A stretch of 64,000 nucleotides of DNA from sequence record MT161459.1; one strand, given 5' to 3'. The translations under genes were made by a program, and so were the position numbers. The notes beneath the pieces are model-generated. The model saw only the letters and a list, made by a program, of their open reading frames with translations. It searched no databases and was not told where the DNA came from. The stretch's first letter is position 1, and every line of letters begins with the position of its first letter. This document shows positions 38,011 to 55,414 of this stretch, piece after piece.

Positions 38011-38508
38011 TCATAGGCCGTATCCAGCAAGCGATCCCGACCGAAGAACCTCAGTGACCTTCTTGGCACGATTTGGAGTTTGCTTCGCCCAAAGACTATC
38101 TAGTCCGTGACGTTTGGCGCCTTCCCAATCCTTCGATATAAGCGCTTTTAACATCGATGGGAATCCAGCGACACCGTTCGCCCCAAGCTGAAAGACCATG
38201 TTCTCTAAGGCGTTTCTACGCACGTTATCAAGGCTGTTATACACCGGATACAGCTTCTGGTGTCGGTTGATGCTAGACTGCACAACCTGCAGATCTTTTG
38301 CAAATAGAGCTTGTGCTTCGGAGTCAGTTATGATACCATCAGTGATAGATCTCCCTACTTGGGAGCTAAGCTCTTTGCAGATGACTTTCATATCTTTGGT
38401 ACGGACTCTCATAATGAGATGTCCGATACCAATTGTCGGATACCCTTCGGTATCCCAGTAGACTTTGGTCTTGTAACCCTCGTCTTGTTTGAGCATTTTA
38501 TCGATCAT
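38011..38508 (-). CDS. e: T4-type lysozyme (endolysin)
   Basis: DEG.K.KVYWDTEGYPTIGIGHL catalytic motif, NMVFQLG..GVAGF, SLWAKQTPNRAKKV. Confidence 0.93.
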   Translation of the reverse strand: MIDKMLKQDEGYKTKVYWDTEGYPTIGIGHLIMRVRTKDMKVICKELSSQVGRSITDGIITDSEAQALFAKDLQVVQSSINRHQKLYPVYNSLDNVRRNALENMVFQLGANGVAGFPSMLKALISKDWEGAKRHGLDSLWAKQTPNRAKKVTEVLRSGSLAGYGL

Positions 38509-38523
38509 TTTAACCTCCTGATG

Positions 38524-38553
38524 AAAGGGGCCGAAGCCCCTTGGATTATTTAG
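38524..38553 (-). promoter_or_regulatory. Late-promoter-like CTAAATA plus hairpin upstream of lysozyme
   Basis: CGCTAAATA embedded in the last codons of the fibre gene (38547-38553), then GGGGC-TTCG-GCCCC. Confidence 0.55.
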
Positions 38554-41500
38554 CGATTTGCTGGCGCAGTTGATTTACCTCGGCTCGAAGTTCCTTGATC
38601 GCCTCAACCAACAGAGCGTTGACTCCAGAGTTTGAAATAGTCAGCACATTGAGGTTATCAACTGGGTTGACCACTTCGGTTACTGCCTCAGGAAGAACAA
38701 GTTGGACGTCCTGAGCAATCAATCCAACCTCGTGAGTTGAATAATCGTTGGACGATAGCGACTGCTTCTTGTCATATGTGTACGCGCACAGTTGGCTGAC
38801 CTTATCGAGAGCTCCGCTAATCTTCACGAAGTTCTTTTTAAGTCTGCGATCCGATCTGATATTGACGTCGTTGAAGTTGCCGTTCCCAACAACGTACAGA
38901 CCACCGCCGGTATCAGCTTGGAATCGCAGAGCTACTTCCCCGCCAGCTCCGTTGGACGTTGCAAGACGGTAGTTTCCAGATCCATCGATGTACGTACAAA
39001 CTGCGTGCTTCCCTGGCATGTGATACTCTAGCATTGGGTTGGAGCCAGCATTAACTTCAACGCGACCGGCGAGTATACTATCTCCGCGTTTGACCAACTC
39101 GTAAGGTCCCTTCTGATTGCCGCCTTCTTGGCCGCCTATCCACGCTTGAGTTCCAGCAAAGTTGATAGCCAGGTATCCAAAGTATCCAGCCGCATTTCCA
39201 TGAGCTTGGTTGAAAAGATATGTCCATCCAGCATTCGGAATGCCCGCAATGTTAGATCCTTGGAAGAATCCAGATTGGCGGCGGAGGTTACAATCGCCCA
39301 AAACTGTGGAAATGCTCGTTCCGTACGTCCCAAGACCGAATCCAACAGGTGCTGCTCCGACCTCCGCTGCAGTGGGTTTGAATCCTTGGTGATATACTCG
39401 TTGGTCAGCATTGCCAAGGTATATATCGCCGCCGGATACGTTCATACAAATCTTGTTCGTTCCGGCGCCCGTAGTGCCCGTAGAGTAGTACAGGTTCCCT
39501 CCAGCCACCTTTTCCCATAACCACGTTGCGCCAGTCGATTCTCTCATAGATCTGATGTTGATCTGCGTTCCAGTTACTCCATTTCCGTTGTGGAATAATT
39601 GTGATACTGCAGCACCGATAGCCGGAGCGGACGTGAATGTCAACCCACCAGTCATCGTATCGCCAGTTTTCGCAACGTTCTTGGCATCAATTGCATCAGC
39701 GTACGCTTTCGTAGCAAGTGATGTTGACTTGGTTCCCATTCCCTCGCTACTAACTTCTGGCTTATACAAATAAATGGAATCATTCGCTTTGTTATAATGC
39801 CACACAGTTCTACCGGTTGTGCTATCTTCGTTTAATCTAATTCCGCCGCCATCAGAAACGAATACATACGACTTCGGACCGCCAACTGCATCAGATTCTA
39901 CAAAGTTGATAGTCGGATACGTCATATTGATCGTCAATGCGCCAGTCATCGTATCGCCAGTTTTAGCAACACGCTTTGCGTCTTGAGCATCAACGTAATC
40001 CTTTCGTGTACTAGCAGCTGCGTTATCAATCTGCGCAGTGGTCTGGATAAAGTCCTTGGCGGTAAACGATCCAACTGAGGTAATATTTCCGTCAGGTAAT
40101 ACGCTTAGAATCGCAGTTTGTGCTTCCGTCCCATGATTCAATTTAAATGCGTTACCATCAGCCCATAGATGGAATCTGGTATTCGATCCATCCGCAAAGC
40201 TGATACTGCCTCTACCGTGAACGTTGATCGCGTTCTTGACTTGATTGGCAACGATGTTATTATAGAACTGAGTCTTATCCAGCTTGATATCAATTAACTC
40301 ATGTTTGTCACCAGTTGTATTGTGCATTCTGAACTTGAAGTATTCGTTCTTATTGTCACCAGTCTCAAACCACATATAGCTGTCTACATCAGAGTCGCTA
40401 TCGTTCTTGAATCCGATCTTGGCCCAATCGGTATTTCTATTCCACACCAATTGACTATCGTTGCTGAATATCATGCTACCAGAGAGGGTATCGCCCGTTT
40501 TCGCAACGCGTTTGGCATCTTGATCGTCAACGTAGTCCTTGCGAGTACTTGCAGCTGCATTATTGAGTTGCGCGGTGGTCTGGATGAAGTTCTGCGCAAA
40601 CGCTTCACCTTCAACGTCTAGCCACGCTCCTGATGCCCCAGCATTGCCAGCACCTCTCATCAGTCTCACACCATATCCAACTCGATAATCATCATGAACG
40701 GAATGCAACAACTCTACGTGCTGATCGCCAGTTCCATGCTCGAACCGAATACGACCGTAATTCTCCTTGACATCAGCTCCTGGATTTTTCAAAACCAGCG
40801 CAGCTTTCTCGCTAGTAATGGACAGATTGCCAGTCATCGGAATGGTGCCATCAGCAACTAGAACTCGACGGTTTCTATCCCATACTTCGCCACTGCGATT
40901 TGACCATCGTGGCATAATTTCAGACAAGTTAGCAGCAGTTGCTTCTTCCATCGTTCTTGTCAAAAACTCTTTCTTGTCTTCGGCAACGAATTTATCGAGA
41001 TAAACTACAACGCCACCTTTATTTCCCTCATCGCTGTGGAATTTATATTCGGCACCACCACCGCGCAACCATACGATCATTGCGTTAGCAGCTAGAACGA
41101 GGCCACCACAAACAGTCGTGTAAGATTGGCTGAATTCGTTGACGTTGATGTTATGGGAGTTGCCACCCCAACCGCCGTCATTGGTCATTTGGAATTCGAA
41201 TGTCAATCCGCCTTTGTGCGTTTTGTTGTTCCACGTATTCGGTGCGGTTGCTGCATAGTGGCGAGAGAAGCAGTACCGCTTCCAACTAAATCCGTCAGTT
41301 GCACCTCTCAGGTTGATAACCACTGGATAGAACGTAGCTGCATCCCCACCAACTGTGAATGTGGTGTGATATCCGTATCCAACATCAGAGTCTTCGTTCA
41401 GGTTCTCTTTCCACGCAGTCCATGCCATGGTACCGTCATTGCGAGTACGAACGTACACGATATTGGTGCGTTGATCGGTCGCCATTTGAGTTACAAATGT

Positions 41501-42805
41501 GTTCCCATCTTTCTCCGAACCAACGACACTCATAGTACCGTAGTCGAACGGAGGTGGGTTCTTGGATCCAGTTGCCTTTGCGAGATACAAGTTGTAATCG
41601 CCAGTCAGATTCAGGGCATCGAAATCGATTGGCCCTTTGAGCTGCTTGGACTTACCTTCCAGCCCGATACGGTCCTTCACGCTCGCCCACGGAATGAATC
41701 CATCAGAGTCAACCAGAACGCGACCTGAGTTGGACCACTTCATGGTAGAGTACAGGAGTACGTCCTTAGTGGTATAAGTTTGAGCGTCAGTCTTGTACCC
41801 GATATACAGATCGCCACCAGCACCACTAACTGTTACGTGACCGTTGTTGTGATCGCGGAAAATGCTGTATTCTTTACCGCCAGTGATAGAGTTAATACCA
41901 CCCACGCCATCGAGTTTGATGATACCGTTGTTCTTCATGGTACCGCCTGAACGACTCAGCGCATCTGCTGGAAGATCATCGAGCTTGATCTTGTCGTCAG
42001 AGCTCATGGATCCGGAACTAGCGCGAGTAGCTGGAGTGATGCTGATGACTGGGTTGATACCGCCAGTTGATACGACAGGAGACGTTGCAGTCACGCTCTT
42101 CACGCTCGTTGCATTCAGCTTGTCCACGTACCCCTTGTGAGCGGCTTGAGTCGCAGCAGTTGGATCCGCTGCTGGTACAGTAATATGAGAGCTGAATGTC
42201 TTGATCCCAGCAATAGTCTGGTTCCCTGAGATCTTGACATTTTGTGCATCCAGGGTCGTTACCCTCGTATCCAAAGCAGCGACAGTTGCGTTAGATGCAG
42301 CATCCTTGGAATCGGTATAATCCATGGATCGCTTGACTTCAGCATCAACATAGTCTTTGCGGGTCAGATGACTAGCAGAAGATGGCATAGTAGCTTGAAC
42401 GGATACCTGTCCACCGCCAATGTCCACGTACTTGGTGATGTTGTCCGTATACAGACGCATGATCCCAGTATTGGAAGTCAGCACTTGGATGCCTGCACGT
42501 CCAGATCCATCTTTGCGATTGGAGGTGAGCAGCCAGTGAGCACTAGAGTCGTTCTCGATAACCTGACTAAACGCTCCGCGAGGTGCAGATGCCCAGCTTC
42601 CATTGGCACCGACACCGAACACACGTCCAGTAGTATCGACATCGCCCTTGAGGCTCAGACCGCCATTGATTGTTTGGCCGCCAATGTCCGTGATGACATC
42701 GAACTGTCTGAAAAACAACTTGTCGTCAACAGGGTTCAGATCCAGGATCCCTTGGTGCCAGACCAAGTTCCCGCCAATCTGCGTCCCTAATTTTAATTCT
42801 GCCAT
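38546..42805 (-). CDS. Long tail fibre distal subunit 2 (gp36/37-like) with C-terminal S74 intramolecular chaperone
   Basis: gp36-like N-terminus LKLGTQIGGNLVWHQG, repeated RKDYVD..DAK.VAKTGDT modules, C-terminal IRSDRRLKKN...LLVEAIKEL. Confidence 0.9.
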   Translation of the reverse strand: MAELKLGTQIGGNLVWHQGILDLNPVDDKLFFRQFDVITDIGGQTINGGLSLKGDVDTTGRVFGVGANGSWASAPRGAFSQVIENDSSAHWLLTSNRKDGSGRAGIQVLTSNTGIMRLYTDNITKYVDIGGGQVSVQATMPSSASHLTRKDYVDAEVKRSMDYTDSKDAASNATVAALDTRVTTLDAQNVKISGNQTIAGIKTFSSHITVPAADPTAATQAAHKGYVDKLNATSVKSVTATSPVVSTGGINPVISITPATRASSGSMSSDDKIKLDDLPADALSRSGGTMKNNGIIKLDGVGGINSITGGKEYSIFRDHNNGHVTVSGAGGDLYIGYKTDAQTYTTKDVLLYSTMKWSNSGRVLVDSDGFIPWASVKDRIGLEGKSKQLKGPIDFDALNLTGDYNLYLAKATGSKNPPPFDYGTMSVVGSEKDGNTFVTQMATDQRTNIVYVRTRNDGTMAWTAWKENLNEDSDVGYGYHTTFTVGGDAATFYPVVINLRGATDGFSWKRYCFSRHYAATAPNTWNNKTHKGGLTFEFQMTNDGGWGGNSHNINVNEFSQSYTTVCGGLVLAANAMIVWLRGGGAEYKFHSDEGNKGGVVVYLDKFVAEDKKEFLTRTMEEATAANLSEIMPRWSNRSGEVWDRNRRVLVADGTIPMTGNLSITSEKAALVLKNPGADVKENYGRIRFEHGTGDQHVELLHSVHDDYRVGYGVRLMRGAGNAGASGAWLDVEGEAFAQNFIQTTAQLNNAAASTRKDYVDDQDAKRVAKTGDTLSGSMIFSNDSQLVWNRNTDWAKIGFKNDSDSDVDSYMWFETGDNKNEYFKFRMHNTTGDKHELIDIKLDKTQFYNNIVANQVKNAINVHGRGSISFADGSNTRFHLWADGNAFKLNHGTEAQTAILSVLPDGNITSVGSFTAKDFIQTTAQIDNAAASTRKDYVDAQDAKRVAKTGDTMTGALTINMTYPTINFVESDAVGGPKSYVFVSDGGGIRLNEDSTTGRTVWHYNKANDSIYLYKPEVSSEGMGTKSTSLATKAYADAIDAKNVAKTGDTMTGGLTFTSAPAIGAAVSQLFHNGNGVTGTQINIRSMRESTGATWLWEKVAGGNLYYSTGTTGAGTNKICMNVSGGDIYLGNADQRVYHQGFKPTAAEVGAAPVGFGLGTYGTSISTVLGDCNLRRQSGFFQGSNIAGIPNAGWTYLFNQAHGNAAGYFGYLAINFAGTQAWIGGQEGGNQKGPYELVKRGDSILAGRVEVNAGSNPMLEYHMPGKHAVCTYIDGSGNYRLATSNGAGGEVALRFQADTGGGLYVVGNGNFNDVNIRSDRRLKKNFVKISGALDKVSQLCAYTYDKKQSLSSNDYSTHEVGLIAQDVQLVLPEAVTEVVNPVDNLNVLTISNSGVNALLVEAIKELRAEVNQLRQQIAK

Positions 42806-42826
42806 TGAAGGTCTCCTCTTTACACG

Positions 42827-42833
42827 TATTTAG
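42827..42833 (-). promoter_or_regulatory. Late-promoter-like CTAAATA
   Basis: CCCTAAATA 22 nt upstream of the fibre-2 ATG. Confidence 0.65.
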
Positions 42834-42841
42834 GGTAAAAG

Positions 42842-42862
42842 AAAAGGCCCCGAAGGGCCTTT
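42842..42862 (-). terminator. Intrinsic terminator after the gp38-like gene
   Basis: AAGGCCC-TTCG-GGGCCTTTT on the minus strand. Confidence 0.8.
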
Positions 42863-42863
42863 G

Positions 42864-43313
42864 TTATAGGTTGAATGTCCAATCGTATCTCTTGTTGGGA
42901 GAGAATGGAGCGTTGCCGAATGTAACGGTTGCGCTGCCTGCTGCACTCCAAGCTTTACCAATCTTGATCCGAGATAAGCTCATCCTCTGCCAAGTATTTG
43001 GCTTGATCCCCTCGGCCACAGCAACTCCAGAACAAGCTACATATACCCACGGATCGCCACTCAGAATGGCATATTGAGCGATCGCTCCATACGGACCGCT
43101 ATGTTTGATGATGACGTTAGAGCCATCGAACCAGAACTCTGGCGCATAGCCGTATAGTCGAGGAGCTTCAATCAGATTGAAGTACACTTTGTCGACCAAC
43201 TCGCTGATCATCCCAGCAGCGCCTAGTCCAGCTTGGGTCCGCATATTCGAACCCCATCCATTTGCTCTTAGCTCCGCATTTGCAGTGCTCATGAAAAACG
43301 GTAGTGCTACCAT
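42864..43313 (-). CDS. 38: gp38-like fibre-tip adhesin/assembly protein
   Basis: Follows distal fibre 1; N-terminal helical attachment-like segment (FFMSTA...GMISELV); hairpin-bridged SD as described for T4 gene 38. Confidence 0.6.
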   Translation of the reverse strand: MVALPFFMSTANAELRANGWGSNMRTQAGLGAAGMISELVDKVYFNLIEAPRLYGYAPEFWFDGSNVIIKHSGPYGAIAQYAILSGDPWVYVACSGVAVAEGIKPNTWQRMSLSRIKIGKAWSAAGSATVTFGNAPFSPNKRYDWTFNL

Positions 43314-43347
43314 AATTTTGACGGGGGATTTCTCCCCCGACCTCCTT
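43314..43347 (-). promoter_or_regulatory. Split ribosome-binding site bridged by a hairpin
   Basis: AAGGAGG-t-CGGGGGA-GAAA-TCCCCCG-tcaaaatt-ATG. Confidence 0.75.
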
Positions 43348-46300
43348 TAGTTAAGTTTAGATTCCAGGTATTTAACTCTGTCCGTTAGTTCCTTGATCGC
43401 TTCCACCAACAGAGCGTTGACTCCGGAGTTGGAAACTGTTAGGTACTCGTTACCAGCGGTATTTTTGAATGTCCCGACGGATTCCGGAAGAACCTTCTGC
43501 AGATCTTGAGCGATAATACCAGCTTCGCGTTTGTCGCATCCAATCTTATCGAACGTGAATCCTGAGAGCATACCAACCTTCTCAACGGCGCTCACGATCG
43601 GCAGGAAGTTGGACTTCAATCGACGGTCCGATCTGATCTGGACATCGTTGAATGATCCATTGCGACTGAACTGAACATCACCGTTGGCTAGATTCATCGT
43701 CATTGGGTGAATGCCGTTGGGACCAGCATCGAACGTATCCCCATTCGCGCCAGCAGATCTCAGAATGTAGAAGATACCACTGTTGGTATGCAGGAATGAG
43801 GAGTGGTTATCCAGATCTTGCAACAACACCGTTGGTGAGCTGTTGTTGATTGTCAAATAACCATCGTTGAGCTGCGTAATAGGCTTGTTGAATGCAAACT
43901 TCGGTCTATCAGTGTAGATGTGCGCATAGCTGCTATTCTGAGCACCGATATCAACAGAACCATTGGTACTGAAAATCTGGAGCTGCTTACTGCCGCCAAC
44001 CGCCAGACGAGTTGTGAAGTCCTCGGTGCTATTGGTGTCATGGAAGTCGATGTACTTCGCGACTTCCATGACACCGTTGGATCCAATGAATGGAACCTTC
44101 CCAACTACTCCTGCCCAAGAGTTGCCGTTATCAACCACCATAGTGTCATTGATCTGACGTCTCCACTTTGGTTGATATGACGCACCTTGGTTGTTGTAGA
44201 TAAACTCACTTTGTGTGTTGTTCTGAGCCCCAGGCATGGAGGTTCCGGACATCGTTGGCGTGGTCAGACGGATCGTATATTCGGCAATTCCATTCACCTC
44301 AACGGTACATCCAGCCAAGTGAATGTTGCCGTATCCAGTATCGGTCAATACGTTATTGGCAGCGTAGTTCCACGTTACATTGCCAACCCAATCGACAGTC
44401 TTGAATGCACCCATAGCAGTCAACAGCTCGATGAATCGAGCAGTCGTGATTCCCGTTTCTCCCGAGGTCTTACCTGCAGCTTTGTCACCGAATGTGATCT
44501 GATGACCGGTAACGTTGACGTTGTCCTTAACGAAGATATCGGTCTTGACTACGAGGTTACCGGTCATCGTGTCACCAGTTTTGGCCACATTCTTCGCATC
44601 TACCGCATCGACGTAATCTTTACGAGCTGCCGAGTTAGCCTCAGTTCCTTGGGCTGCCGATAGTAGGACTTTCGGTACAGTCAAGTTACCGGACATAGTG
44701 TCACCGGTTTTAATGACGTATCTTGCATCGCTCGTCGATTTGGAATATACATCATTTCGAAGAGTAGTAACTAGGTTATCGACGTAGTCTTTGCGAGTAC
44801 ATGCAGCAGCGCTCGTGGATTGAGCTGTGGTCTGGATGAAATCTGGAGCGTTCAATGTACCAGTCATTGTGTCGCCAGCTCTGGACACCAAGTTCAGATC
44901 AACGTTCGTTGGCTTGTTCAGGTTGGTGTAGATTTCTGCCCAGATAGGAGCGTTCGTTCCGGTTTGGTTTGTGCCGATGTAGTTCTTGTTATCAGTATCA
45001 CCATACGGAATATAGATCCCTGCGTATCCGCCTGCACTATCCCGACGACCTAGAATATTCCAATAACCGCCCTTCATTCCAGCTGGACCGCCAACGGAGT
45101 CTGGCTTAACCATTCGAGCTTGGCCCAGAGGTCCAGCCCATTGGTTGGCAGGGACTGTAACGTATGCCAGTGCATCTTTGCCGAGGTTGGTAGCGTTATC
45201 AATGATGCTTGGGACGGTCAGACGACCGGTCATAGTATCGCCAGTTCTGTTGACTGCAGCAGCAGGAATGCCGTCCAGCTTAGCCTTATCAGCAAAGCTC
45301 ATTGCGCCGTCAGTCTGGTTGGTAGCGTTATCCAAGCTAATGACTGGATTGATACCGCCAGTGCTCTTGACTGCTCCAGTTGCAGTTACGGACTGAACAG
45401 CAGTTCCGACTTTGTCATCCACATACTTCTTGGTAACCAGGTGATTATCGGCCGTACCAGTTTTGTAGATCGCGATCGTGCCATCGTTGTTGAACACGCT
45501 TTCGCCTGCTGGAGTGCCAATACCCTGAGGTCTTATTGACAATACTCCAGTACCGCCACCAAGTATAGTACGCCCATCAGCCCCTACAAACATACCCTGA
45601 GCATTGTTCGTCGAACGCACAAATCCGTAGTCGGTGGATGCCTTGAACTGAGTAGCGATCAGTACACCAGTCATAGTGTCACCAGCTTTTGCTACAGTCT
45701 TCGCATCCTGAGCGTCGACGTAGTCCTTACGAGCGCTAGCTGCACCGTTACTAGACTGCGGAGTGGTCTGGATGAAGTCTGGACCGTTCAATGATCCGGT
45801 CATGGTATCGCCAGCTCTGGACACCAAGTTCAGATCGACGTTTGTTGGTTTGTTGTCGGAGCTGTAAATCCGCTCCCTAACTTCGACATCGGTGACTGTG
45901 TAGCTAGTTGCGTCGGAAATCAGGATTGGATCTGCGCCGTAACAGTATCCGTCGATGACCAGAGTTGCTGCAGAAACTGCCGCGCGATACATCGCCAGAT
46001 ATTCGACTCCATTGTGAGTCGTGTATACCAGTTTGACCGGAGTGCCGCCAGATGCGTAGTGGATCTGAGCATCGGTCGCTGTGTATCCAGTCACAGCAGA
46101 TAAGTCGACGTAGTTTGCTTGGAGAGTTGATGTCGTTGCACCGCGATCGAACGTTACACGACCAACAAATCCACTCTTAGGCAGAGCAGCGCCGATGTAT
46201 TTCGGACAGAATAGAACCAGCACAGGCTTCGCATCATTTTGCGGTCCCAATTGCTTCATGATGCGACGAACGCCCCATCCAGTCACGCACTGGAAGGTGC

Positions 46301-47432
46301 TATTCCGAATGGTCAGAGGTCCAGTCATTTCATCGCCAGCGCGAGAAACCAGATTCAGCTCGTCATTAGTCGGCTTATCATCTTCGTGGTAGATGCGAGT
46401 AGATGCCATCCAATCTGCACGACCGTGTTTGAACCACAATCTCTTGTCGTCGGCGTCGGAACGCGCAGCAGAGAATAGAGACCACGCTGCGTAGTTGCCT
46501 TCCCACCCCTTGACCGTGAACCCAGACACCCAACTACTCGTAACATCACTCTGGTTAGTGAAGTACAATCCCATCGTTTTTGGATCCAACGCACTTGGCT
46601 GAATCATTGTAGCTCGCTCGTCCTTGACGCGCAACCAACTCTTGGTATCAATCTCAGCCTTGTTATAAGCGCCTAGGTCGTTTGGCGTTGGCTTGTTTGC
46701 TGGGTGATACACCATGTGGTCGCCAACGTATAGTGGCGTATTCGAAATGTTCTTGGTCGTTCTAACATCAAACCCCGATGTTCTATTTCCAACTCCGGCA
46801 CCAGCAGATCTGATTTCAAGCAGATCTCCACCCTTCGCTTGATCATACGGCCCCATTCTGAAAAAGGTAGAATTGCCTGCTGCGTCCCACCCAGCGGTAA
46901 CGCTTGCCACTTCGTTTACACGAACCTTTCTTGACGCTGAGTCGAACAACAGATCGCCAGTCATAGTATCGCCAGCTTTGGCCACGTTCTTAGCATCGAT
47001 AGCATCCACGTAGTCTTTACGAACAAAGCTGTTTGCAGCTGTCGATTGAGCAGCGTTGGTCAATACAGAGTTTTGGAAGATTGCTGATGCACCATGAGCG
47101 AGTTCCAGAATCAACCCAGCATCGGTATTCCCAGTCGAGATCCGATATTTCGTATTCTGGACTGTTTCGTGCCAAATCGTATCATTATTACCGCCGCGGA
47201 ATTTTCTCAGCATACTCTTGGAGCCAGCTGGCAATACAGAGATACTTTCGATATCGTATTGGTTAGCTGGGACATTGAACTTCATGGTGCCCTTGAGAGT
47301 CTGATAACCAGTATCGACTAGCACCTCTTGATCTTGAAAGTACAGCTTGGTGTCAACTGGGTTTAGGTCCAAGATCCCTTGGTGCCATACCAAGTTACCA
47401 CCAATCTGCGTACCTAATTTTAGGTCAGCCAT
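43347..47432 (-). CDS. Long tail fibre distal subunit 1 (gp36/37-like) with C-terminal S74 chaperone
   Basis: Same N-terminal motif as fibre 2, fibre repeat modules, IRSDRRLKSN...LLVEAIKEL. Confidence 0.9.
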   Translation of the reverse strand: MADLKLGTQIGGNLVWHQGILDLNPVDTKLYFQDQEVLVDTGYQTLKGTMKFNVPANQYDIESISVLPAGSKSMLRKFRGGNNDTIWHETVQNTKYRISTGNTDAGLILELAHGASAIFQNSVLTNAAQSTAANSFVRKDYVDAIDAKNVAKAGDTMTGDLLFDSASRKVRVNEVASVTAGWDAAGNSTFFRMGPYDQAKGGDLLEIRSAGAGVGNRTSGFDVRTTKNISNTPLYVGDHMVYHPANKPTPNDLGAYNKAEIDTKSWLRVKDERATMIQPSALDPKTMGLYFTNQSDVTSSWVSGFTVKGWEGNYAAWSLFSAARSDADDKRLWFKHGRADWMASTRIYHEDDKPTNDELNLVSRAGDEMTGPLTIRNSTFQCVTGWGVRRIMKQLGPQNDAKPVLVLFCPKYIGAALPKSGFVGRVTFDRGATTSTLQANYVDLSAVTGYTATDAQIHYASGGTPVKLVYTTHNGVEYLAMYRAAVSAATLVIDGYCYGADPILISDATSYTVTDVEVRERIYSSDNKPTNVDLNLVSRAGDTMTGSLNGPDFIQTTPQSSNGAASARKDYVDAQDAKTVAKAGDTMTGVLIATQFKASTDYGFVRSTNNAQGMFVGADGRTILGGGTGVLSIRPQGIGTPAGESVFNNDGTIAIYKTGTADNHLVTKKYVDDKVGTAVQSVTATGAVKSTGGINPVISLDNATNQTDGAMSFADKAKLDGIPAAAVNRTGDTMTGRLTVPSIIDNATNLGKDALAYVTVPANQWAGPLGQARMVKPDSVGGPAGMKGGYWNILGRRDSAGGYAGIYIPYGDTDNKNYIGTNQTGTNAPIWAEIYTNLNKPTNVDLNLVSRAGDTMTGTLNAPDFIQTTAQSTSAAACTRKDYVDNLVTTLRNDVYSKSTSDARYVIKTGDTMSGNLTVPKVLLSAAQGTEANSAARKDYVDAVDAKNVAKTGDTMTGNLVVKTDIFVKDNVNVTGHQITFGDKAAGKTSGETGITTARFIELLTAMGAFKTVDWVGNVTWNYAANNVLTDTGYGNIHLAGCTVEVNGIAEYTIRLTTPTMSGTSMPGAQNNTQSEFIYNNQGASYQPKWRRQINDTMVVDNGNSWAGVVGKVPFIGSNGVMEVAKYIDFHDTNSTEDFTTRLAVGGSKQLQIFSTNGSVDIGAQNSSYAHIYTDRPKFAFNKPITQLNDGYLTINNSSPTVLLQDLDNHSSFLHTNSGIFYILRSAGANGDTFDAGPNGIHPMTMNLANGDVQFSRNGSFNDVQIRSDRRLKSNFLPIVSAVEKVGMLSGFTFDKIGCDKREAGIIAQDLQKVLPESVGTFKNTAGNEYLTVSNSGVNALLVEAIKELTDRVKYLESKLN

Positions 47433-47455
47433 TAGAGTCTCCTTATGTATTGATT

Positions 47456-47462
47456 TATTTAG
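47456..47462 (-). promoter_or_regulatory. Late-promoter-like CTAAATA
   Basis: CGCTAAATA 24 nt upstream of the fibre-1 ATG. Confidence 0.65.
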
Positions 47463-47464
47463 CG

Positions 47465-47545
47465 GTGGAGCGTAGCGACACTCCCCGAAGGGGGGGAGAA
47501 ATAGAATCTCCTTATACCCTTTAAAGAGACTCTATAAGTCCCCCT
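47465..47545. repeat. Structured non-coding repeat, copy 2
   Basis: Near-identical to 22317-22395. Confidence 0.9.
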
Positions 47546-47670
47546 GTCGACCTACGGTCGAGATGCTTCGCATCAAACCTTCTATAACTCGCTACTATCA
47601 ATCCTCTCGGTATCCCGATAGATCGTACCGATGCTACCAAGAAACGATTCCTACGTGGATTTAGACGCAC

Positions 47671-47696
47671 AAAAAAGCCCTCCCCGAAGGGAGGGC
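47671..47696 (-). terminator. Intrinsic terminator after gene 35
   Basis: GCCCTCCC-TTCG-GGGAGGGC-TTTTTT on the minus strand. Confidence 0.85.
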
Positions 47697-47722
47697 AAAG
47701 GTACCGGGTGAATGGTACAATC

Positions 47723-50700
47723 TTATAGTTCAACCCAAGATGGACCAACTATCACGCTGTTGGCTCCATCACCTCTCGGTATGAACACTATCTTCTTATT
47801 TGCGTTTACTTCGTCGAACCACTTTGCAACGATTTCGGATTCTGGAATACCATATCCAAACCCATCGATTGCTTGGTTAGCGTTAAACGTCCCAACGAGT
47901 TGGTCATCCACTGAATACAACTCGATGTCAATGCTATTGAATGGTCTAGCATTATTCTCGAAATTCAGGTAAGCGCTATAACCTGTTGTATTTATAGAGG
48001 TAAACTTCAACAGCTTGTAACCATCAACAGCCCACATATCCTTTAGACGACCAACTTCTTTCGGAAGAGTTCGATCCCAGCCAGTCACCTTTGGCGATTC
48101 GCTTATGGTATCAATTCTCAACTGTTTCGAGATCTTGACGTCGTTTGGAATAATGTTGGTTGTTGGCTTCACACTGCTGCGTCTAGTAAGATCGTAGCGT
48201 CGGTGGTTACACTTCTCGGTAGATGTGTCAATCAGCTCTACCAACGAGATGTCACTATTGTATCTCCACGCTCCGTCGCGAGCTCCAATCATTTTCACGT
48301 TACAAGACTGATCTTTGGTCCACAGACACGATTTGGATTTACCGTTCACAGTGACTGTTGCAGTACCATCAACCACATCAACTACTACCGTTGCCACATC
48401 GCCAACCTTTAGACCGTGAGGAATGGTTACTCCATCGATAACCTTCTTGTTAGCATCATATCCGAAGAATCTCAGATTTGTTCCGGTATAGATATCGATG
48501 TTGATCGTGCTCTGATCATACTTCGCTCCGGAGATGATGGGAGATGGCATCTCAGTCGTTACGCCCAGTCTAAAGTCCACTCTGATTCGGAAGTTGTTGG
48601 CATCCGGAGTCCAAGTCGGAACGTTGACAAACGCATTACTGCCTCGGAAGTTCGGGACCCAAGTCGTCATCCCAGTAGTTCTCATGCTTGGCTCAACGAA
48701 GTCGTTGAACTGGTAATCTCCACCAGTGACGTTAGATCCAATTCCGTCAGTTGGGACACGCGTTATTTTCAATTTGTGAACCTTGACGACTTCATCCAGC
48801 TTTGGACTGATCGTTCTGATGTAAACCCCAGGACCATCTTTGCCTGTAACCGGAACGTGTTGAAAGCTGACCGCCCCTCTAGCTCTACCAACTGGAAGTG
48901 CTTTGATGAGTGGCGCAGATCCATTTGTTACTCCAGATGCGCGAAACTCAGTGGGGCTCGAGGTCTCGATATCATATTCAATGCGATACCGATCTGCAGG
49001 GTTTAATCCAGCAGAATACACAATGCCCGATGGAGTCAACGCTGTGGTGAACTTATACGACTTGCTATTAACTCGCACTGCGGTACTGAACAATGTCCAA
49101 TCGTTGATATCAAACGCCTTGTAAACTGTATCAGTTTTAGCGCTCATGTCTCTGATAGAGTTGCTAAACGCTGGGAATCTAGATCTTGCTACGTTCTTGT
49201 AGTATCGACTATCAGTCTCGCCCGTGACGGAGAAGTCCCAAATGTATCCATCCAAGAACTCGGTGTCGTTATGACGACATCCAATGCAACTCACTCCACC
49301 TTTGTGGATATAACCGGTTATGTGATAATCGGTATTCAGCGCGACGTTCATCTGTCCAGCAACAAATGGCAATCCGTTAACGGACGCAATTGTAATATTG
49401 CCACCGCCGCCATTGATTATCTGATTGGTAACATATACGTGGCACGGAGTTGCAGCATCCTCTACGGTACGGCCATCGAACAAATAATACGCATTAGTCT
49501 TTGGATAGCTGTTGAGACGAAACTTCAAGCTAAACTCGCCTGGCCCTTTCCAAGTTGGAACGTAGACCCCAGACTTACCGTTGAAGTTGTATGTCTTTGT
49601 TCCGACATTCACCCAATCGACGTTGGTTACTTCTGCATCGATGAGAGGGTGAGCAACGTACTCCACCTTGACCTTCATTTTATTAGCATTCTGCGTTCCA
49701 TCCGGACGTATTACGATCCATCCTATATCGCCAGTCGTTGGGTTAGCGAATGCGGATCTATTTCCAGTAGTTCGTCCACCATCCTCGGGCATCGCAACCA
49801 CCTTCACTTTGTATCGAGTGCCGACAACTACTCCGATCAGCTCGTTTCCGCCAGCATCGAGAATAGTCACAAATGCTTCATCTCCTGCTTGTAATCCATA
49901 CTGAGCAGCACCAGATGTCGGACCGCAGTACAGAGCTTGGTTTGATGGCGATGGAGTGACGTTATCAGAAACGTACGTTTTACCGCTGTATCTAGATCTG
50001 CCAACAACCTTGCGATCGTCGTCTAGTTGACCAGCTAGCACGAAATTGTAGTATCGACTATTGCGGTCGTCATTCAGATCGATCAGATTGAGCTCGTGAA
50101 CTGCGCCACTAATTGGATGCATGAATGAACCGGCGCGTCCCTCAGCTCCGACTACAAAGTATGGGAATACCTTAGGTTTGTTGGTTCCTGAACCTGCTGG
50201 CTGATACTGAACGCCGTCAATGTAGAACGATGGCGTTCCGCTATTGACTACGATCTTGTACGTGTACGACTTGCCGTACTCGATTGTAGTCGGAACGTCA
50301 ACTCTTGTACTGCCATATCTCAAGAAATGAGCTTCTCCATCTGGATGCAGAATAGTTCGAATGCCGCACTCGAGCGCCATGTCTTCGGTATTGCCCGATA
50401 TTCCACCTTGGCCAGATCTCATCCAAGTGCTGCCACCATTGATGATGGCCGGATATTTGTACGACACCGTCTGACTCATTTCAAAGTCGCCAGTCGGTTG
50501 CCATAACGGAACTACGAATTGACCATCTCCGTTGAAATCTGGGAGCCATTCTTCATCCAGGCTCTCGTATGATGATGTGACAAACGTCTTTCCATTAACT
50601 GTAGCAACAGGCTTATCAGCTTCTTTCGCTACGTCTGTAATGAAACCCCATTGACCGATTGACCCCATTCCGGTCTTGCTGTATATGGCAGGCTTGCACA

Positions 50701-51634
50701 ATTTAACGGTTACGTCGCGAACCCCAATCTTACCTTTACCCTTTGTGTTGTTGGTGATCCGATACAAACTGATCTCAATGTGAGTCGTCTTGGGTGGGAT
50801 CTTAGTTTGAACAGATTTGGATCCCCATTCAAATGGAGCAAGATATGCCGATGTAATAGAATCCCCAGACACGTACGCAGCGCCATTCCAATACTGAATA
50901 ATCAACGCACTAAACTGACCGTCTTTTTTGCAGATATCGTCGTGCATTAATTCGGCAGTAATCTCGATCGTTTCTCCAATCTTTGCTTGGAAGTTGCCAA
51001 GCGGCTCGCTCTTGATAAAACTCTTGACCAAGTAGTCCGGTCCGCCAGCGGATATAAACTCATTTTCGTCCCACACGATAGTATCACCGTAACCAGTAGT
51101 TCCGATATCCGCAAATGTGTCATACACTACACTAAGCTGTGCTGGAGGTGTAGTCTTGCCGTGGCCCATATATTGTTCAGACATCAACTTCATGAGTTTG
51201 CAGTCCAATATACCAACCATCGATGTTCTGTTGGTCCCCTTCTCTGGATTCCAATAATATTTCCAGCCCACAGATCCCCACGATTCAAATAACGCATTAA
51301 GCGTATCATTTGTAACGTTTTCTGTGTGACTCATGAATAGTACAATCCCTGATGTTTTGCCGCCAATCCAAGTAGAGAACATTGCAGTATCTGCAGCTTC
51401 TGCAAAGTTGAACACAGCGGGAGTCAACTCGTTAGTCTCGCTGATGTGAATGCAATTGAGTCCCTTGAGGTTGGACGGACTAAGGCTTATCCCATTGAGG
51501 GTGGCAACGCAGGATCCCCCCGCGTTGCCTTGTTGACCTTTGATGTAAATTTCATTTTGGCCGGAGAACGTTTCCGACAGATCTCTCGTCTGTACTCCGT
51601 TCTCCGTAATACGAGCAATTACTAACTCAGCCAT
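47723..51634 (-). CDS. 35: Long tail fibre hinge gp35 with large C-terminal extension
   Basis: First ~345 aa resemble gp35 (VYDTFADIGTTGY...EFISAGG); synteny after 34; 1303 aa. Confidence 0.8.
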   Translation of the reverse strand: MAELVIARITENGVQTRDLSETFSGQNEIYIKGQQGNAGGSCVATLNGISLSPSNLKGLNCIHISETNELTPAVFNFAEAADTAMFSTWIGGKTSGIVLFMSHTENVTNDTLNALFESWGSVGWKYYWNPEKGTNRTSMVGILDCKLMKLMSEQYMGHGKTTPPAQLSVVYDTFADIGTTGYGDTIVWDENEFISAGGPDYLVKSFIKSEPLGNFQAKIGETIEITAELMHDDICKKDGQFSALIIQYWNGAAYVSGDSITSAYLAPFEWGSKSVQTKIPPKTTHIEISLYRITNNTKGKGKIGVRDVTVKLCKPAIYSKTGMGSIGQWGFITDVAKEADKPVATVNGKTFVTSSYESLDEEWLPDFNGDGQFVVPLWQPTGDFEMSQTVSYKYPAIINGGSTWMRSGQGGISGNTEDMALECGIRTILHPDGEAHFLRYGSTRVDVPTTIEYGKSYTYKIVVNSGTPSFYIDGVQYQPAGSGTNKPKVFPYFVVGAEGRAGSFMHPISGAVHELNLIDLNDDRNSRYYNFVLAGQLDDDRKVVGRSRYSGKTYVSDNVTPSPSNQALYCGPTSGAAQYGLQAGDEAFVTILDAGGNELIGVVVGTRYKVKVVAMPEDGGRTTGNRSAFANPTTGDIGWIVIRPDGTQNANKMKVKVEYVAHPLIDAEVTNVDWVNVGTKTYNFNGKSGVYVPTWKGPGEFSLKFRLNSYPKTNAYYLFDGRTVEDAATPCHVYVTNQIINGGGGNITIASVNGLPFVAGQMNVALNTDYHITGYIHKGGVSCIGCRHNDTEFLDGYIWDFSVTGETDSRYYKNVARSRFPAFSNSIRDMSAKTDTVYKAFDINDWTLFSTAVRVNSKSYKFTTALTPSGIVYSAGLNPADRYRIEYDIETSSPTEFRASGVTNGSAPLIKALPVGRARGAVSFQHVPVTGKDGPGVYIRTISPKLDEVVKVHKLKITRVPTDGIGSNVTGGDYQFNDFVEPSMRTTGMTTWVPNFRGSNAFVNVPTWTPDANNFRIRVDFRLGVTTEMPSPIISGAKYDQSTINIDIYTGTNLRFFGYDANKKVIDGVTIPHGLKVGDVATVVVDVVDGTATVTVNGKSKSCLWTKDQSCNVKMIGARDGAWRYNSDISLVELIDTSTEKCNHRRYDLTRRSSVKPTTNIIPNDVKISKQLRIDTISESPKVTGWDRTLPKEVGRLKDMWAVDGYKLLKFTSINTTGYSAYLNFENNARPFNSIDIELYSVDDQLVGTFNANQAIDGFGYGIPESEIVAKWFDEVNANKKIVFIPRGDGANSVIVGPSWVEL

Positions 51635-51649
51635 CTGGCCCCCTTGATC

Positions 51650-54600
51650 TTATGTAATCCAAACAAACTCGATCGATCTGGTCGTAGCATTTGGACGAAG
51701 TTCCAAGAACTCTCCATTGCCTACTGCGATGCGAACGGTTTTAACGGTAAGAATTTCTTTGATGTCTACACTGCCTTCCGCAACCAGAGCTTGTCCAGCC
51801 TTGATGGTCAGGGTTCCAGTCATCGTGTCTCCTTTCTTATTTACACGCATACTGGCACTAGAGGTGACATCATCGATTGCATTATCGACGTAATCCTTAC
51901 GAGTCAAGTCGTTGGCAGCAACAGGAGCGCTCTGAGCAGTACGAACCTGACCGGATGCAGTGAAGATACCATTCGTGTCCAGAATTGCGTGGTTGGTTGC
52001 ATCGGCACGACCTTTCGGACGCAGATACAAAGTTCCAGTAGATCCCAGTGACGTCATGCCGTTTGCATCGACAGAGATACCAGCGTTACCAGCACCAATG
52101 TTCACATCGTACGCAATGTTGTTGCCAGCACTCAGCACAATGTTGTTCTGGAACGTCTTGATCCCAGTGATCGTCTCAGCTAGTGCACCAGTCTTGCGTA
52201 GATATCGACCTTCGGTGTAGTTGAAGCGAGTCAAGTGGTTAGCAGAGTTTGGATCTTGACCGCCGTTTGCTACTTGGTTAGTAGTAACCAATGTACCGTC
52301 ACGTCCGAACGTTGCAGTCGGAGTGTGAGTTGCTCCAGCCAGAGTTCCAACTGTGTACGAACCATCAAGAACGTTGACGCCAGTCTGCCATCCAGTATCT
52401 TTTGCAGTTGCAGTGTATTGGATTGCTGTATTGTGTCCAGTAGCTGCATCGTTCAGAATCAATCTGCAAGTATTCTTGGAGATGGTCAGATTCTGGGTCA
52501 GGGTCAGTGCACCGGTAACTGTTTGATCTACAGTACGACGAACCCAATCGTCTGCCTTGACACGAGTGCCATCAGCCGTATCCATATTACGCGTTGACTC
52601 GGCAACTGCCTTGATCGGAAGATAATGACTCAGTGCAGTATTCAGACCGCGAGGACTGACTACGATGTCGAAGTGGCCGTAACTTGCGAGAGCTCGAGTA
52701 CTACCAGCAACGTCGTCACCCTGCCATACAGATTGAACGTTCGCGTCGTTACCAAGAGTAGACATTTTAGATCCACCGTAACGGGACTCAGTCATCCGAT
52801 GGTTACCACTGTCGCGAATAGCAGTCAACAGTTTCTTGGGTGTTAATGCTTTAGCATCGTCAGTGCCATCGTTTACTTCAACTTGGGTAGCGATCTCGAT
52901 CAAGCCTGTCAGAGTCTCTGTTGCTTGTCTTGCGTTCAGTTTCTTTGGCGTTACTACAGCGTCATCGACCGGAGTAACCATCGCGTTGGTTTCAGCTTGG
53001 GTCGCTACGCGCAGAGTACCACGTTGCGCTTCGGTAGACAGTTGGATGTTGAAGCTCTGTCCAGCCCAGATGTTCCCAGCTGTAGTCAGACCGCTTGCTG
53101 GATCTACAGTCAAACGTTCTCTGATCAACCAGTTGCCAAACGTTTTTGGAGTCACGAAGTACTTGTCGTGCAATGCGCCACCGTCTACTTCAGCTTGGGT
53201 TGCAGTCTCAGCAAATCCCCAACATACTTCAGTTGCAGTTCGCTTGACCAACGCATCGGGCGTAGCGTGAACGTTATCTCCAGCTGGTGGAGTGTTTGAC
53301 AGCATTTCTGCATCCGTCACCGCTCTGGACAATCCAGTCAACGTCTGGGTTGCTTGTCTTGCATTCAAACGACTTGCGTTGACAAACAGTGGACCGTTCG
53401 CGTGATCTGCAGTTCCAGCATTGACTTCTGCCTGAGTAGCAACGAATCCCATACCCTGAGATGTATCAGTCGCCACCTTCTCGAACAGAGTCTTTGGAGT
53501 TACATAACGGTAATGCTCGGCGAAGTTGTGAACCCCAGCGCCAGCCGTTCCGCGTTCTGCCTGCTTAGCTCCTGCCGCGATCACTTGGTACGTGATACCG
53601 GTTTGAGTTTCGGTTGACTTCCGACCATCAAGAACTGCTGGAGTGATAGCAGTCTGAGACCACATTTCGCCAGATCCGGACATCGCATTGGCTTGTGCCT
53701 GAGTCGCTACAGTGAGAACGCCGCGCATTGTATCCGTTGCTAGTCTGTTGTTCAGACGCTCAGGAGTAATGATGACTCCATTCCAACCTTCGGTAGTTCC
53801 TGCGGTCGCTTTGGATTCGGCATCAGTAGCGAGACGAGCAATACCACGCATCGTCGTATTCGCGATCTTACTTGCCAGAGTTTCTGGAGTTACAAACGCT
53901 TCGCAATCGCGAGTCTGTCCTGCAGTGATTTGTTCCTTGTTCTTGTTGACTTCTGCCTGATCTGCAATTGCAGCCATACCAACGAACTTGGTATCAGAAC
54001 GATCAACGCGGAACGGCAACGGAATGTTGGTCACGAGCGTCCAAACGTCCAGCCCTGTGTTGTTAGCATTACGCCAGTACGCAAACTCCCACTGGGATGC
54101 GCGGTTATCGATGATAACTGTTTCTTTCTTGGTAGCGTATGCACGAAGGTTCTTGACAATATCTCTATACTTCGATACACGAGGGGAAATTAGGACTTCG
54201 TCGTCTGGGACGATATAGTCATTGGTCTGGGCTGGATCAACCTGCAAGATGATCGTACTGCCTTGGATCATGTAGCTCGTGTCGATATAAAAACTGTCAC
54301 CGTTTGCTGCCTCTGGTGGAAGCGTGATCGTGATCGGAGTCTTGGTATCCAGAGTACAGACTGCTAACTTCTCTCCAAGTACTGCGGTGTAGCTTGATTG
54401 CACCATCTTCCAACGACCTTGCTTGTCGCCATCAAAGATGCGCCATTGGTTGACTCGGCTATCAAAAATCAACATACCCCATCCAGAACTATCTGAACGA
54501 ATGGAATCGACTGGAGTCTCGCCTGGCCCCCACACAATCTTGTGGTTGCTGCCTGGATAGATGAAGACCTCAGTTTTAGTCAGAGGGTTCATGCCATCTA

Positions 54601-55383: not shown

Positions 55384-55414
55384 TATTTAGCGATGTATGC
55401 TGCTGAGCTACGCT
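55384..55414. promoter_or_regulatory. Back-to-back promoters for 34 (late) and rnh
   Basis: Minus strand: CGCTAAATA (55384-55392); plus strand: TTTAGC-N17-TACGCT. Confidence 0.55.

What the first reader, a model, noticed from the sequence alone, without database searches (positions are those of the whole stretch)
38546..47432. Two complete distal long-tail-fibre genes, each with its own late promoter
Seen: the 1361-aa and 1419-aa fibres both begin MA(D/E)LKLGTQIGGNLVWHQGILDLNPVD (identical protein apart from residue 3, many synonymous DNA differences) and both end in an S74-type chaperone (IRSDRRLK...LLVEAIKEL). Their middle and tip regions are largely unrelated. Each has its own CTAAATA and a terminator separates them. 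Only fibre 1 is followed by a gp38-like tip protein. Established: T4 has one gp36/37 per fibre. Inference: both N-termini dock on the same gp35 socket, so virions may carry mixed or alternative fibres. That would give two receptor specificities without an invertase; no recombinase is present nearby.
Basis: partly seen in the sequence, partly recalled or inferred. Interest (0 to 1): 0.65.

Follow-up and report, generated by a model that had tools for sequence, protein, structure and literature searches.

The report
Two alternative distal tail-fibre genes
This T4-like Aeromonas phage carries two complete, separately promoted genes for the outer half of its long tail fibre that share the same attachment end. 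The pair is real and conserved, but it was already reported for its relative Aeh1, and whether both fibres sit on virions is still untested.

Summary
The window is Aeromonas phage Ahp1_CNU-2021 (MT161459.1, 100% identity), an Aeh1-like member of the Straboviridae.

**Observation: confirmed.**
- Fibre 1 (43347-47432, minus strand, 1361 aa) and fibre 2 (38546-42805, minus strand, 1419 aa) share a 27-residue T4-gp36-type N-terminus that differs only at residue 3.
- Both end in a Peptidase_S74 chaperone with a Ser/Lys pair.
- Each has CTAAATA 22-24 nt upstream of its ATG. This is the published Aeh1 late-promoter motif.
- A strong terminator separates them.

**What the survey adds.**
- The pair is not peculiar to this phage. 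All ten Aeh1-like phages in GenBank have two such genes.
- In the six I compared, plus one metagenomic contig, they form two old lineages, A and B. Each lineage has its own conserved proximal shaft (dN/dS 0.11-0.20).
- In all seven phages the shared N-terminal peptide is held at the protein level while synonymous sites are heavily diverged, near saturation in most.
- Close relatives have exchanged the distal part of A or of B independently.

**Interpretation.** Two functional, alternative distal half-fibres competing for one gp35 kneecap is the best reading. Binding and virion content remain untested.

**Already published.** Trojet et al. 2011 described the tandem g37 duplication in Aeh1, each copy followed by a small ORF, and called its function unclear.

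**Correction.** The "gp38-like" ORF149 is gp38-like by position only.

The parts
51650..55351 (-). gp34, proximal half-fibre (1233 aa). CTAAATA lies at 55384-55390, 33 nt upstream.
   Evidence: phrog_972, E = 0. Promoter motif. Same position as gene 34 in Aeh1 and PX29.
47723..51634 (-). gp35 kneecap, enlarged to 1303 aa. Residues 3-340 are T4-gp35-like. Residues ~366-1303 are a string of lectin-type (LamG/ConA-like) beta-sandwiches. It has no promoter of its own and is probably co-transcribed with gp34.
   Evidence: phrog_11229 E = 0 and phrog_1154 E = 1.7e-40 over aa 3-340. AF2 of aa 360-1303, mean pLDDT 66. Best Foldseek match neurexin LNS1-6, E = 1.5e-8, then laminin LG and sialidase lectin domains.
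47677..47696 (-). Intrinsic terminator after gp35
   Evidence: 8-bp stem, UUCG loop, U run, -18.6 kcal/mol, z = -3.95.
47456..47462 (-). CTAAATA late-promoter motif of fibre 1, 24 nt before the ATG
   Evidence: The motif was published as the Aeh1 late promoter (PMC1524935). CTAAATA or a (T)ATAAATA variant sits about 30 nt upstream of fibA in all seven phages compared.
43347..47432 (-). Fibre 1 (A lineage), 1361 aa, a gp36::gp37-type distal half-fibre. The docking peptide is codons 1-28 (47349-47432). The S74 chaperone starts at Ser1268 (43347-43631).
42864..43313 (-). ORF149, a small conserved protein of unknown function (phrog_11523). It is probably co-transcribed with fibre 1. Its AGGAGG is separated from the AUG by a stable hairpin (within 43314-43345).
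42843..42862 (-). Intrinsic terminator between the two fibre transcription units
   Evidence: 8-bp stem, UUCG loop, U-rich tail, -13.6 kcal/mol, z = -3.4.
42827..42833 (-). CTAAATA late-promoter motif of fibre 2, 22 nt before the ATG
   Evidence: CTAAATA is present upstream of fibB in all seven phages compared.
38546..42805 (-). Fibre 2 (B lineage), 1419 aa. It has a B-type proximal shaft (aa 1 to ~800) and an A-type distal part. The docking peptide is codons 1-28 (42722-42805). The S74 chaperone starts at Ser1318 (38546-38854).
38011..38508 (-). Lysozyme e, which marks the end of the fibre module. It is preceded by CTAAATA (38547-38553) and a hairpin leader.
   Evidence: PF00959, E = 7.6e-13..

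Best explanation
Fibre 1 and fibre 2 are two functional, alternative distal halves of the long tail fibre.

Each is a single polypeptide that combines the roles of T4 gp36 (the N-terminal end that meets the gp35 kneecap) and T4 gp37 (shaft and receptor-binding tip). Each folds as a homotrimer with the help of its own C-terminal S74 chaperone, which then cuts itself off.

Both genes are transcribed late from their own CTAAATA promoters. Both trimers then present the same about 27-residue N-terminal peptide to the one kneecap protein. Each of the six knees would therefore receive either fibre 1 or fibre 2, and the burst would contain virions with mixed sets and two receptor specificities, without any DNA switch.

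Shown here: gene structure, homology of the N-terminus to gp36, the S74 domain with its Ser/Lys pair, the promoters and terminator, conservation and purifying selection on both lineages, and independent exchange of distal modules.

Inferred: binding to gp35, co-expression, competition for the socket, and mixed virions.
For: 1. The N-terminus aligns with T4 gp36, with invariant M1 A2 L4 K5 G7 G11 G12 W16 H17 Q18 G19 L23 N24 P25 plus the RKDYVD collar. tblastn of the first 45 aa hits annotated gp36 genes of T-even phages at 47-51% identity.
2. All ten distinct Aeh1-like phages in the phage collection have exactly two genes with this N-terminus. The layout gp34, long gp35, fibA, small ORF, fibB, lysozyme was read from the annotation of six of them plus one metagenomic contig.
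3. There are two orthologous lineages. fibA aa 1-370 is 53-78% identical between phages and fibB aa 30-470 is 57-100% identical. dN/dS is 0.11-0.20 for both.
4. Within every genome, the first 28 codons of A and B differ at 6-17 codons synonymously but at only 1-3 residues (pS 0.38-0.92 against pN 0.015-0.06). This points to selection on the peptide, not recent gene conversion.
5. Late-promoter motifs lie about 30 nt upstream of both genes in all seven phages, and this motif is the published Aeh1 late promoter.
6. Distal parts are exchanged independently. phiAS5 and phiWae14 have gp34 100%, gp35 99% and fibB 100% identical but a fibA tip only 22% identical. PX29 and AsFcp_2 have fibB aa 30-470 94% identical but aa 470-790 only 20%. 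A metagenomic relative has fibB 89% identical over aa 1-473 and unrelated beyond.
7. Part of the fibre 2 tip is 84-85% identical in DNA to the distal fibre of phiAS4-type Aeromonas phages.
8. Mature lengths of 1267 and 1317 aa match one T4 distal half-fibre.
Against: - There is no direct evidence that either N-terminus binds gp35.
- There are no proteomic, EM or RNA data for this phage or its relatives in the papers searched, and no usable RNA run.
- Relative expression levels are unknown.
- In Ah1 the fibB gene is annotated as two overlapping ORFs. If that is real, a phage can do without B.
- Trojet et al. state only that fibre length fits a single gp37 trimer. That fits this model but does not show that both types are used.
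Confidence: 0.55

Rival explanations
1. Only one fibre type is used at a time. Both genes are intact, but one product dominates through stronger translation, faster folding or higher affinity for gp35. The other would be a minor or host-dependent reserve, so virions are essentially uniform.
For: Nothing in the sequence fixes the ratio. Trojet et al. raised 'a single expressed version' as a possibility. The Ah1 fibB gene is annotated as split.
Against: Both have the same promoter motif at the same distance and strong Shine-Dalgarno sequences. Both lineages are under similar purifying selection, and both exchange their distal parts.
Confidence: 0.2
2. One of the two fibres is not part of the long tail fibre. 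It would attach elsewhere on the particle through the same kind of N-terminal peptide, or act as a free receptor-binding protein.
For: Binding to gp35 is inferred only. The kneecap is very large and other docking surfaces cannot be excluded.
Against: The 27-residue peptide is nearly the same in both and is homologous to gp36. Both genes lie inside the gp34-gp35 fibre module in every relative compared. Only two places per genome carry this peptide.
Confidence: 0.1
3. Forked fibres: the enlarged gp35 kneecap holds one trimer of each type at once, so every long fibre is Y-shaped.
For: gp35 is 3.5 times the size of T4 gp35 in exactly the phages that have two fibres.
Against: The same gp35 extension occurs in the phage 65, CC2 and ZPAH1 group (26-28% identity over 90-97% of it). 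In ZPAH1, the one genome of that group I searched, there is only one gene with the gp36-type N-terminus. gp35 has no internal repeat of its T4-like part. The extension looks like lectin domains, not a second socket. Trojet et al. report a fibre size that fits a single trimer.
Confidence: 0.05
4. One copy is a decaying duplicate, or the two products form heterotrimers.
For: [quoted passage not shown]
Against: Both ORFs are intact over more than 1300 codons in nearly all relatives, with dN/dS 0.11-0.20. Beyond residue ~30 the chains are only 20-37% identical, with many gaps. In the relatives checked, fibB lacks the S74 chaperone that fibA has. A common trimer is therefore very unlikely.
Confidence: 0.04

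Closest known systems
Aeromonas phage Aeh1 ORF316w/317w/318w/319w, the tandem 'g37 duplication' described by Trojet et al. 2011 (PMC3157838)
   Same: Same clade and same gene order: gp34, long gp35, fibre A, small ORF, fibre B. Same shared gp36-type N-terminus and the same late-promoter motif before each fibre.
   Different: Only the proximal shafts are alike (56% identical over fibre B aa 1-499 and about 54% over fibre A aa 1-370). In Ahp1 fibre 2 also ends in an S74 chaperone, whereas fibB of Aeh1, PX29, phiAS5 and AsFcp_2 does not. The DUF7338 gene that follows fibB in six relatives is missing.
T4 gp36 + gp37, the distal half of the long tail fibre
   Same: gp36-type N-terminal motif and collar motif. 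Total mature length 1267 or 1317 aa against 1247 aa. Position after gene 35.
   Different: One fused polypeptide instead of two. Self-cleaving S74 chaperone instead of the T4 needle tip with gp38/gp57A. Two genes instead of one.
Peptidase_S74 intramolecular chaperones, as in K1F endosialidase, T5 pb1 and many Straboviridae gp37
   Same: Pfam PF13884 above the cut-off on both fibres. Ser and Lys are five residues apart (S1268/K1273 and S1318/K1323). Described as common at gp37 C-termini of Straboviridae (PMC12143355).
   Different: Cleavage was not tested here.
Invertible tail-fibre switches of Mu (S/S', Gin) and P1
   Same: Two alternative distal fibre ends on a common attachment part. Shaft segments of both fibres resemble Mu S (5yvq E = 1e-27, 8ju3 E = 2e-17).
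   Different: No invertase and no inverted repeats. Both genes are complete, in the same orientation, and each has its own promoter, so both can be made in one infection.
T2/S16-type gp38 adhesin and T4-type gp38 / lambda-type Tfa chaperones, as models for ORF149
   Same: A small ORF directly after a distal fibre gene. Its N-terminal ~45 residues are conserved and its C-terminal part is more variable.
   Different: No Pfam family even at E <= 5. No glycine-rich motifs. Generic beta-sandwich fold with no clear structural match. Within each of its two types it is 93-98% identical while fibre A tips differ.

Membership tests
T4 gp36 (distal connector of the long tail fibre) | N-terminal motif of the end that joins the gp35 kneecap | tested here: met
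   Alignment with T4 gp36 has 14 invariant positions in the first 25 residues. tblastn hits annotated gp36 genes at 47-51% identity over 37-40 aa.
T4 gp36 (distal connector of the long tail fibre) | Pfam PF03903 (Phage_T4_gp36) above its gathering score | tested here: not met
   Neither Ahp1 fibre hits at E <= 0.01. The fibA orthologues of Aeh1 (33.7 bits) and PX29 (46.6 bits) pass the 26-bit cut-off.
T4 gp36 (distal connector of the long tail fibre) | Physical binding to gp35 | not testable with these tools
Peptidase_S74 intramolecular chaperone | Pfam PF13884 above its gathering score at the C-terminus | tested here: met
   41.2 bits and 55.9 bits against a cut-off of 22.
Peptidase_S74 intramolecular chaperone | Ser-Lys catalytic pair, with Lys five residues after Ser (spacing taken from my own knowledge of endosialidase) | tested here: met
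   SDRRLK at 1268-1273 in fibre 1 and at 1318-1323 in fibre 2.
Peptidase_S74 intramolecular chaperone | Autoproteolytic release after trimer folding | not testable with these tools
   Needs protein expression and mass determination.
T4 gp35 kneecap | Homology to the T4-type gp35 family | tested here: met
   phrog_1154, E = 1.7e-40 over aa 3-340. Direct BLAST against T4 gp35 is weak (27% over 70 aa, E = 0.004).
T2/S16-type gp38 adhesin (for ORF149) | Sequence family, glycine-rich motifs, hypervariable segments | tested here: not met
   No Pfam hit at E <= 5. No glycine runs. 93-98% identical within each type.
Caudovirales tail-fibre assembly chaperone (Caudo_TAP / T4 gp38) (for ORF149) | Sequence family | tested here: not met
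   No hit. By contrast, the ORF after fibB in PX29 and in L026 does hit Tfa-like families.
Invertase-driven tail-fibre switch (Mu Gin/G segment type) | Site-specific recombinase, plus inverted repeats that flank alternative 3' gene parts | tested here: not met
   No recombinase annotated within 12 kb. Only weak inverted repeats of 19-30 nt, 70-85% complementary, in no meaningful position.
Aeh1-type late promoter | CTAAATA upstream of late genes | tested here: met
   All four minus-strand copies lie 22-45 nt upstream of late-gene start codons. The motif is defined in PMC1524935. Promoter activity was not tested.

The most novel reading that the evidence does not exclude
The long fibres are forked. 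The enlarged, lectin-studded gp35 kneecap would hold one trimer of fibre 1 and one of fibre 2 at the same time. Each of the six fibres would then carry two different receptor-binding tips, plus a possible sugar-binding knee.
Probability: 0.05. Interest if true: 0.8.

Novelty: new member of a known kind. Interest (0 to 1): 0.3.

Why it matters
If both fibres are mounted, Aeh1-like phages would be T4-type phages that widen or hedge their host range simply by making two distal half-fibres for one socket. They would need no DNA inversion and no mutagenic retroelement.

The shared 27-residue docking peptide would then be a natural plug for swapping receptor-binding modules, which is useful for engineering phages against Aeromonas in aquaculture.

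The question has stood open since 2011. It can be answered with one proteomics experiment and two knock-outs. The sequence analysis here narrows it in three ways:
- heterotrimers and a decaying copy are unlikely;
- both lineages are maintained and diversify independently;
- the giant kneecap is not tied to having two fibres.

Tried and rejected
There is no verdict on docking.
- **The genome search 'own'**: no genome is held for this window. I used the GenBank record through its handle instead.
- **The look-up of sequencing runs**: 18 runs, all holding 9% or less of the sampled words, none a true infection RNA run. Read laying was therefore not used, and there is no expression evidence.
- **ORF149**:
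  - Pfam at E <= 5 gave nothing.
  - The word-based protein search found only 5 close relatives.
  - The full HMMER search added weak hits to unrelated repeat proteins with no common family.
  - The AF2 model has pLDDT 59.
  - Foldseek against PDB found nothing at E <= 0.001.
  - VIA-wide gave a best Z of 5.0, a generic sandwich.
- **ORF149 as a tip-specific partner of fibre A**: rejected. Its identity between phages tracks the neighbouring fibB shaft (r = 0.65-0.70) and not the fibA tip (r = -0.14). Simple linkage can explain that correlation.
- **Co-variation of residue 22 in both paralogues with gp35**: rejected. The metagenomic relative L026 has D22 in A but N22 in B.
- **Giant gp35 as a sign of two sockets**: rejected, see the forked-fibre rival.
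- **Literature**: no virion proteome or fibre study of an Aeh1-like phage was found in the library.
Full report
**Identity of the window.** Megablast of 38000-48000 gives a 100% match over the full length to Aeromonas phage Ahp1_CNU-2021 (MT161459.1, 218 kb, Straboviridae, host A. hydrophila). Window position equals record position minus 62000. All the genes discussed are annotated there as hypothetical proteins.

On the minus strand the long-tail-fibre module reads as follows:

| Gene | Coordinates | Length |
|---|---|---|
| gp34 | 51650-55351 | 1233 aa |
| gp35 | 47723-51634 | 1303 aa |
| Fibre 1 | 43347-47432 | 1361 aa |
| ORF149 | 42864-43313 | 149 aa |
| Fibre 2 | 38546-42805 | 1419 aa |
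| Lysozyme e | 38011-38508 | 165 aa |

- The two fibres share residues 1-27 apart from D3/E3, and they diverge from residue 28.
- At the DNA level the first 28 codons differ at 10 codons synonymously and at 2 with a residue change.
- Both C-termini hit Pfam Peptidase_S74 above the cut-off. Both contain SDRRLK, with Ser1268/Lys1273 in fibre 1 and Ser1318/Lys1323 in fibre 2. That Ser-Lys spacing is the catalytic pair of this chaperone family; this rests on my own knowledge of the endosialidase work.
- Between the ends the proteins share only repeated collar motifs.
- CTAAATA lies 24 nt before the ATG of fibre 1 and 22 nt before that of fibre 2. The motif is not over-represented in the window (6 copies against 4.5 expected). 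All four minus-strand copies nevertheless sit 22-45 nt upstream of the starts of gp34, fibre 1, fibre 2 and lysozyme.
- Nolan et al. 2006 derived exactly this motif as the late promoter of Aeh1 (PMC1524935).
- Stable UUCG hairpins with U runs follow gp35 and ORF149.

The transcription units are therefore gp34-gp35, then fibre 1-ORF149, then fibre 2, then lysozyme.

**What the fibres are.**
- The N-terminus aligns with T4 gp36. There are 14 invariant positions in the first 25 residues, followed by the RKDYVD collar.
- tblastn of the first 45 residues finds the annotated gp36 genes of hundreds of T-even-type phages at about 47-51% identity.
- If the S74 part is cut off before the Ser, the mature chains are 1267 and 1317 residues. 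T4 gp36 plus gp37 is 221 + 1026 = 1247.
- Each gene therefore encodes a whole distal half-fibre in one chain.
- A recent T4 cryo-EM preprint describes gp35 as a monomeric kneecap that joins the (gp34)3 rod to the (gp36)3-(gp37)3 rod (bioRxiv 10.64898/2026.03.06.709160). That the gp36 N-terminal end is the end at the knee is established T4 knowledge.

- All ten distinct Aeh1-like phages in the collection (Ahp1, Aeh1, PX29, phiAS5, Ah1, AsFcp_1, AsFcp_2, AsFcp_4, avDM12-TAAL, phiWae14) have exactly two places with this N-terminus. Almost all other Straboviridae have one: 563 records gave 581 places.
- The gene order is the same in Aeh1, PX29, phiAS5, AsFcp_2, phiWae14 and Ah1, and in a metagenomic contig close to Ahp1 (L026).
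- The genes form two orthologous lineages. fibA orthologues share aa 1-370 (53-78% identical) and fibB orthologues share aa 30-470 (57-100%). Further out, the sequences are mosaics.
- dN/dS for both shafts is 0.11-0.20.
- In every genome the first 28 codons of A and B differ at 6-17 codons synonymously but at only 1-3 residues (pS 0.38-0.92, pN 0.015-0.06). The peptide is held by selection in both genes and is not copied back and forth.
- A late-promoter motif lies about 30 nt upstream of both genes in all seven phages. It is CTAAATA for fibB throughout, and CTAAATA or a (T)ATAAATA variant for fibA.
- Close relatives have exchanged one fibre and kept the other. phiAS5 and phiWae14 are 99-100% identical in gp34, gp35 and fibB but only 22% identical in the fibA tip. 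PX29 and AsFcp_2 are 94% identical in fibB aa 30-470 but 20% in aa 470-790. L026 is 89% identical to Ahp1 fibre 2 over aa 1-473 and unrelated beyond that.

This independent module exchange is what one expects of two working receptor-binding proteins.

**What is particular to Ahp1.**
- fibA carries the S74 chaperone in all phages checked.
- fibB lacks it in Aeh1, PX29, phiAS5, AsFcp_2 and L026, but has it in Ahp1.
- From about residue 700-800 onwards, Ahp1 fibre 2 resembles A-type distal parts: 61% identity to AsFcp_2 fibA 667-917 and 50% to 868-1287.
- A 293-nt stretch of its tip is 84-85% identical to the distal fibre of phiAS4-type phages.
- The six other phages have a DUF7338 gene after fibB. 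PX29 and L026 also have a Tfa-like gene there. Ahp1 has neither, and the CTAAATA-plus-hairpin leader that precedes DUF7338 elsewhere now precedes lysozyme.

**ORF149.**
- The family (phrog_11523) follows fibA in all relatives compared.
- It has no Pfam family even at E <= 5 and no glycine-rich motifs.
- The AF2 model (pLDDT 59) shows an undefined N-terminal 54 residues and a small beta-sandwich. Neither Foldseek nor VIA-align finds a convincing match.
- It comes in two types that are 37% identical to each other and 93-98% identical within a type. Its identity between phages does not follow the fibA tip.

It is therefore gp38-like only by position, and its role is open. It could be an assembly factor or an accessory fibre protein.

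**Prior knowledge.**
- Trojet et al. 2011 state that RB43 and Aeh1 have duplications of g37 and that the function is unclear. [quoted passage not shown] - The Aeh1 GenBank notes already say 'similar to gp37 and gp36' for both ORFs.
- I found no proteomic or structural study of these fibres.

**Mechanism and rivals.**
- The best reading is two alternative homotrimeric distal half-fibres that compete for one kneecap socket, which would give mixed virions (confidence 0.55).
- Heterotrimers and a decaying copy are unlikely, given the divergence beyond residue 30 and the purifying selection.
- A forked fibre is weakened by the phage 65, CC2 and ZPAH1 group. These phages have the same gp35 extension, and ZPAH1, the one genome of that group I searched, has only one gp36-type fibre. 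phiAS4 has a 380-aa gp35 and one fibre.
- Still open are dominance of one fibre, and attachment of one fibre elsewhere on the particle.
- If the two are made in equal amounts, and if three engaged fibres suffice as in T4 (my own knowledge), about two-thirds of particles would carry at least three of a given type. This is arithmetic on an assumption, not a result.

**Verdict.** However, the feature is a conserved and already published trait of the Aeh1 group, and the decisive facts (binding to gp35, presence of both fibres in virions) remain to be measured.

Noticed in passing
window 47723-51634 (-): The gp35 kneecap has 1303 aa, against 372 in T4. After the T4-like first ~365 residues comes a string of about six all-beta lectin-type (LamG/ConA-like) domains. 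The best fold matches are neurexin LNS1-6, laminin LG and sialidase lectin modules. The extension is shared with the phage 65, CC2 and ZPAH1 group at 26-28% identity. It could be an extra sugar-binding element at the knee.
   Followed up: partly
window 47433-47722: The 290-nt spacer between gp35 and fibre 1 holds one of seven copies of a dispersed non-coding cassette in this genome (77-92% identity to the other copies). It is the element described in earlier finding s1-159441.
   Followed up: partly
window 43308-43352 (-): The AGGAGG of ORF149 lies 29 nt before its AUG, separated from it by a stable hairpin (7-bp core stem; the 45-nt stretch folds at -17 kcal/mol, z = -2.9). The arrangement is conserved in Aeh1 and PX29. 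From memory, it resembles the split ribosome-binding sites of T4 genes 38 and 25.
   Followed up: partly
window 38509-38556 (-): Ahp1 lacks the DUF7338 membrane-protein gene that follows fibB in six relatives. The CTAAATA and GGGGCTTCGGCCCC leader of that gene now sits directly before lysozyme e.
   Followed up: partly
window 39088-39380: Part of the fibre 2 tip (aa 1141-1239) is 84-85% identical in DNA to the distal fibre gene of phiAS4, IME13, AS-gz and related 160-kb Aeromonas phages. This indicates a fairly recent module exchange between distant T4-like groups.
   Followed up: partly
window 42864-43313; L003 14001-22534; L007 16701-20766; L026 63-3972: Annotation problems in public records:
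- ORF149 is annotated from an internal ATG (115 aa), while the family spans 142-149 aa.
- PX29 gp35 is not annotated.
- PX29 fibB starts 36 codons too late.
- Ah1 fibB and L026 fibA are split by apparent frameshifts.

   Followed up: no
fibre 1 aa 995-1096 and fibre 2 aa 765-886: Both shafts contain a segment homologous to the phage Mu tail-fibre protein S/S' (8ju3 E = 2e-17, 5yvq E = 1e-27). The S74 region of fibre 2 also matches the C-terminal gp37 fragment crystallised with gp38 from phage S16 (6f45, E = 7e-9).
   Followed up: no
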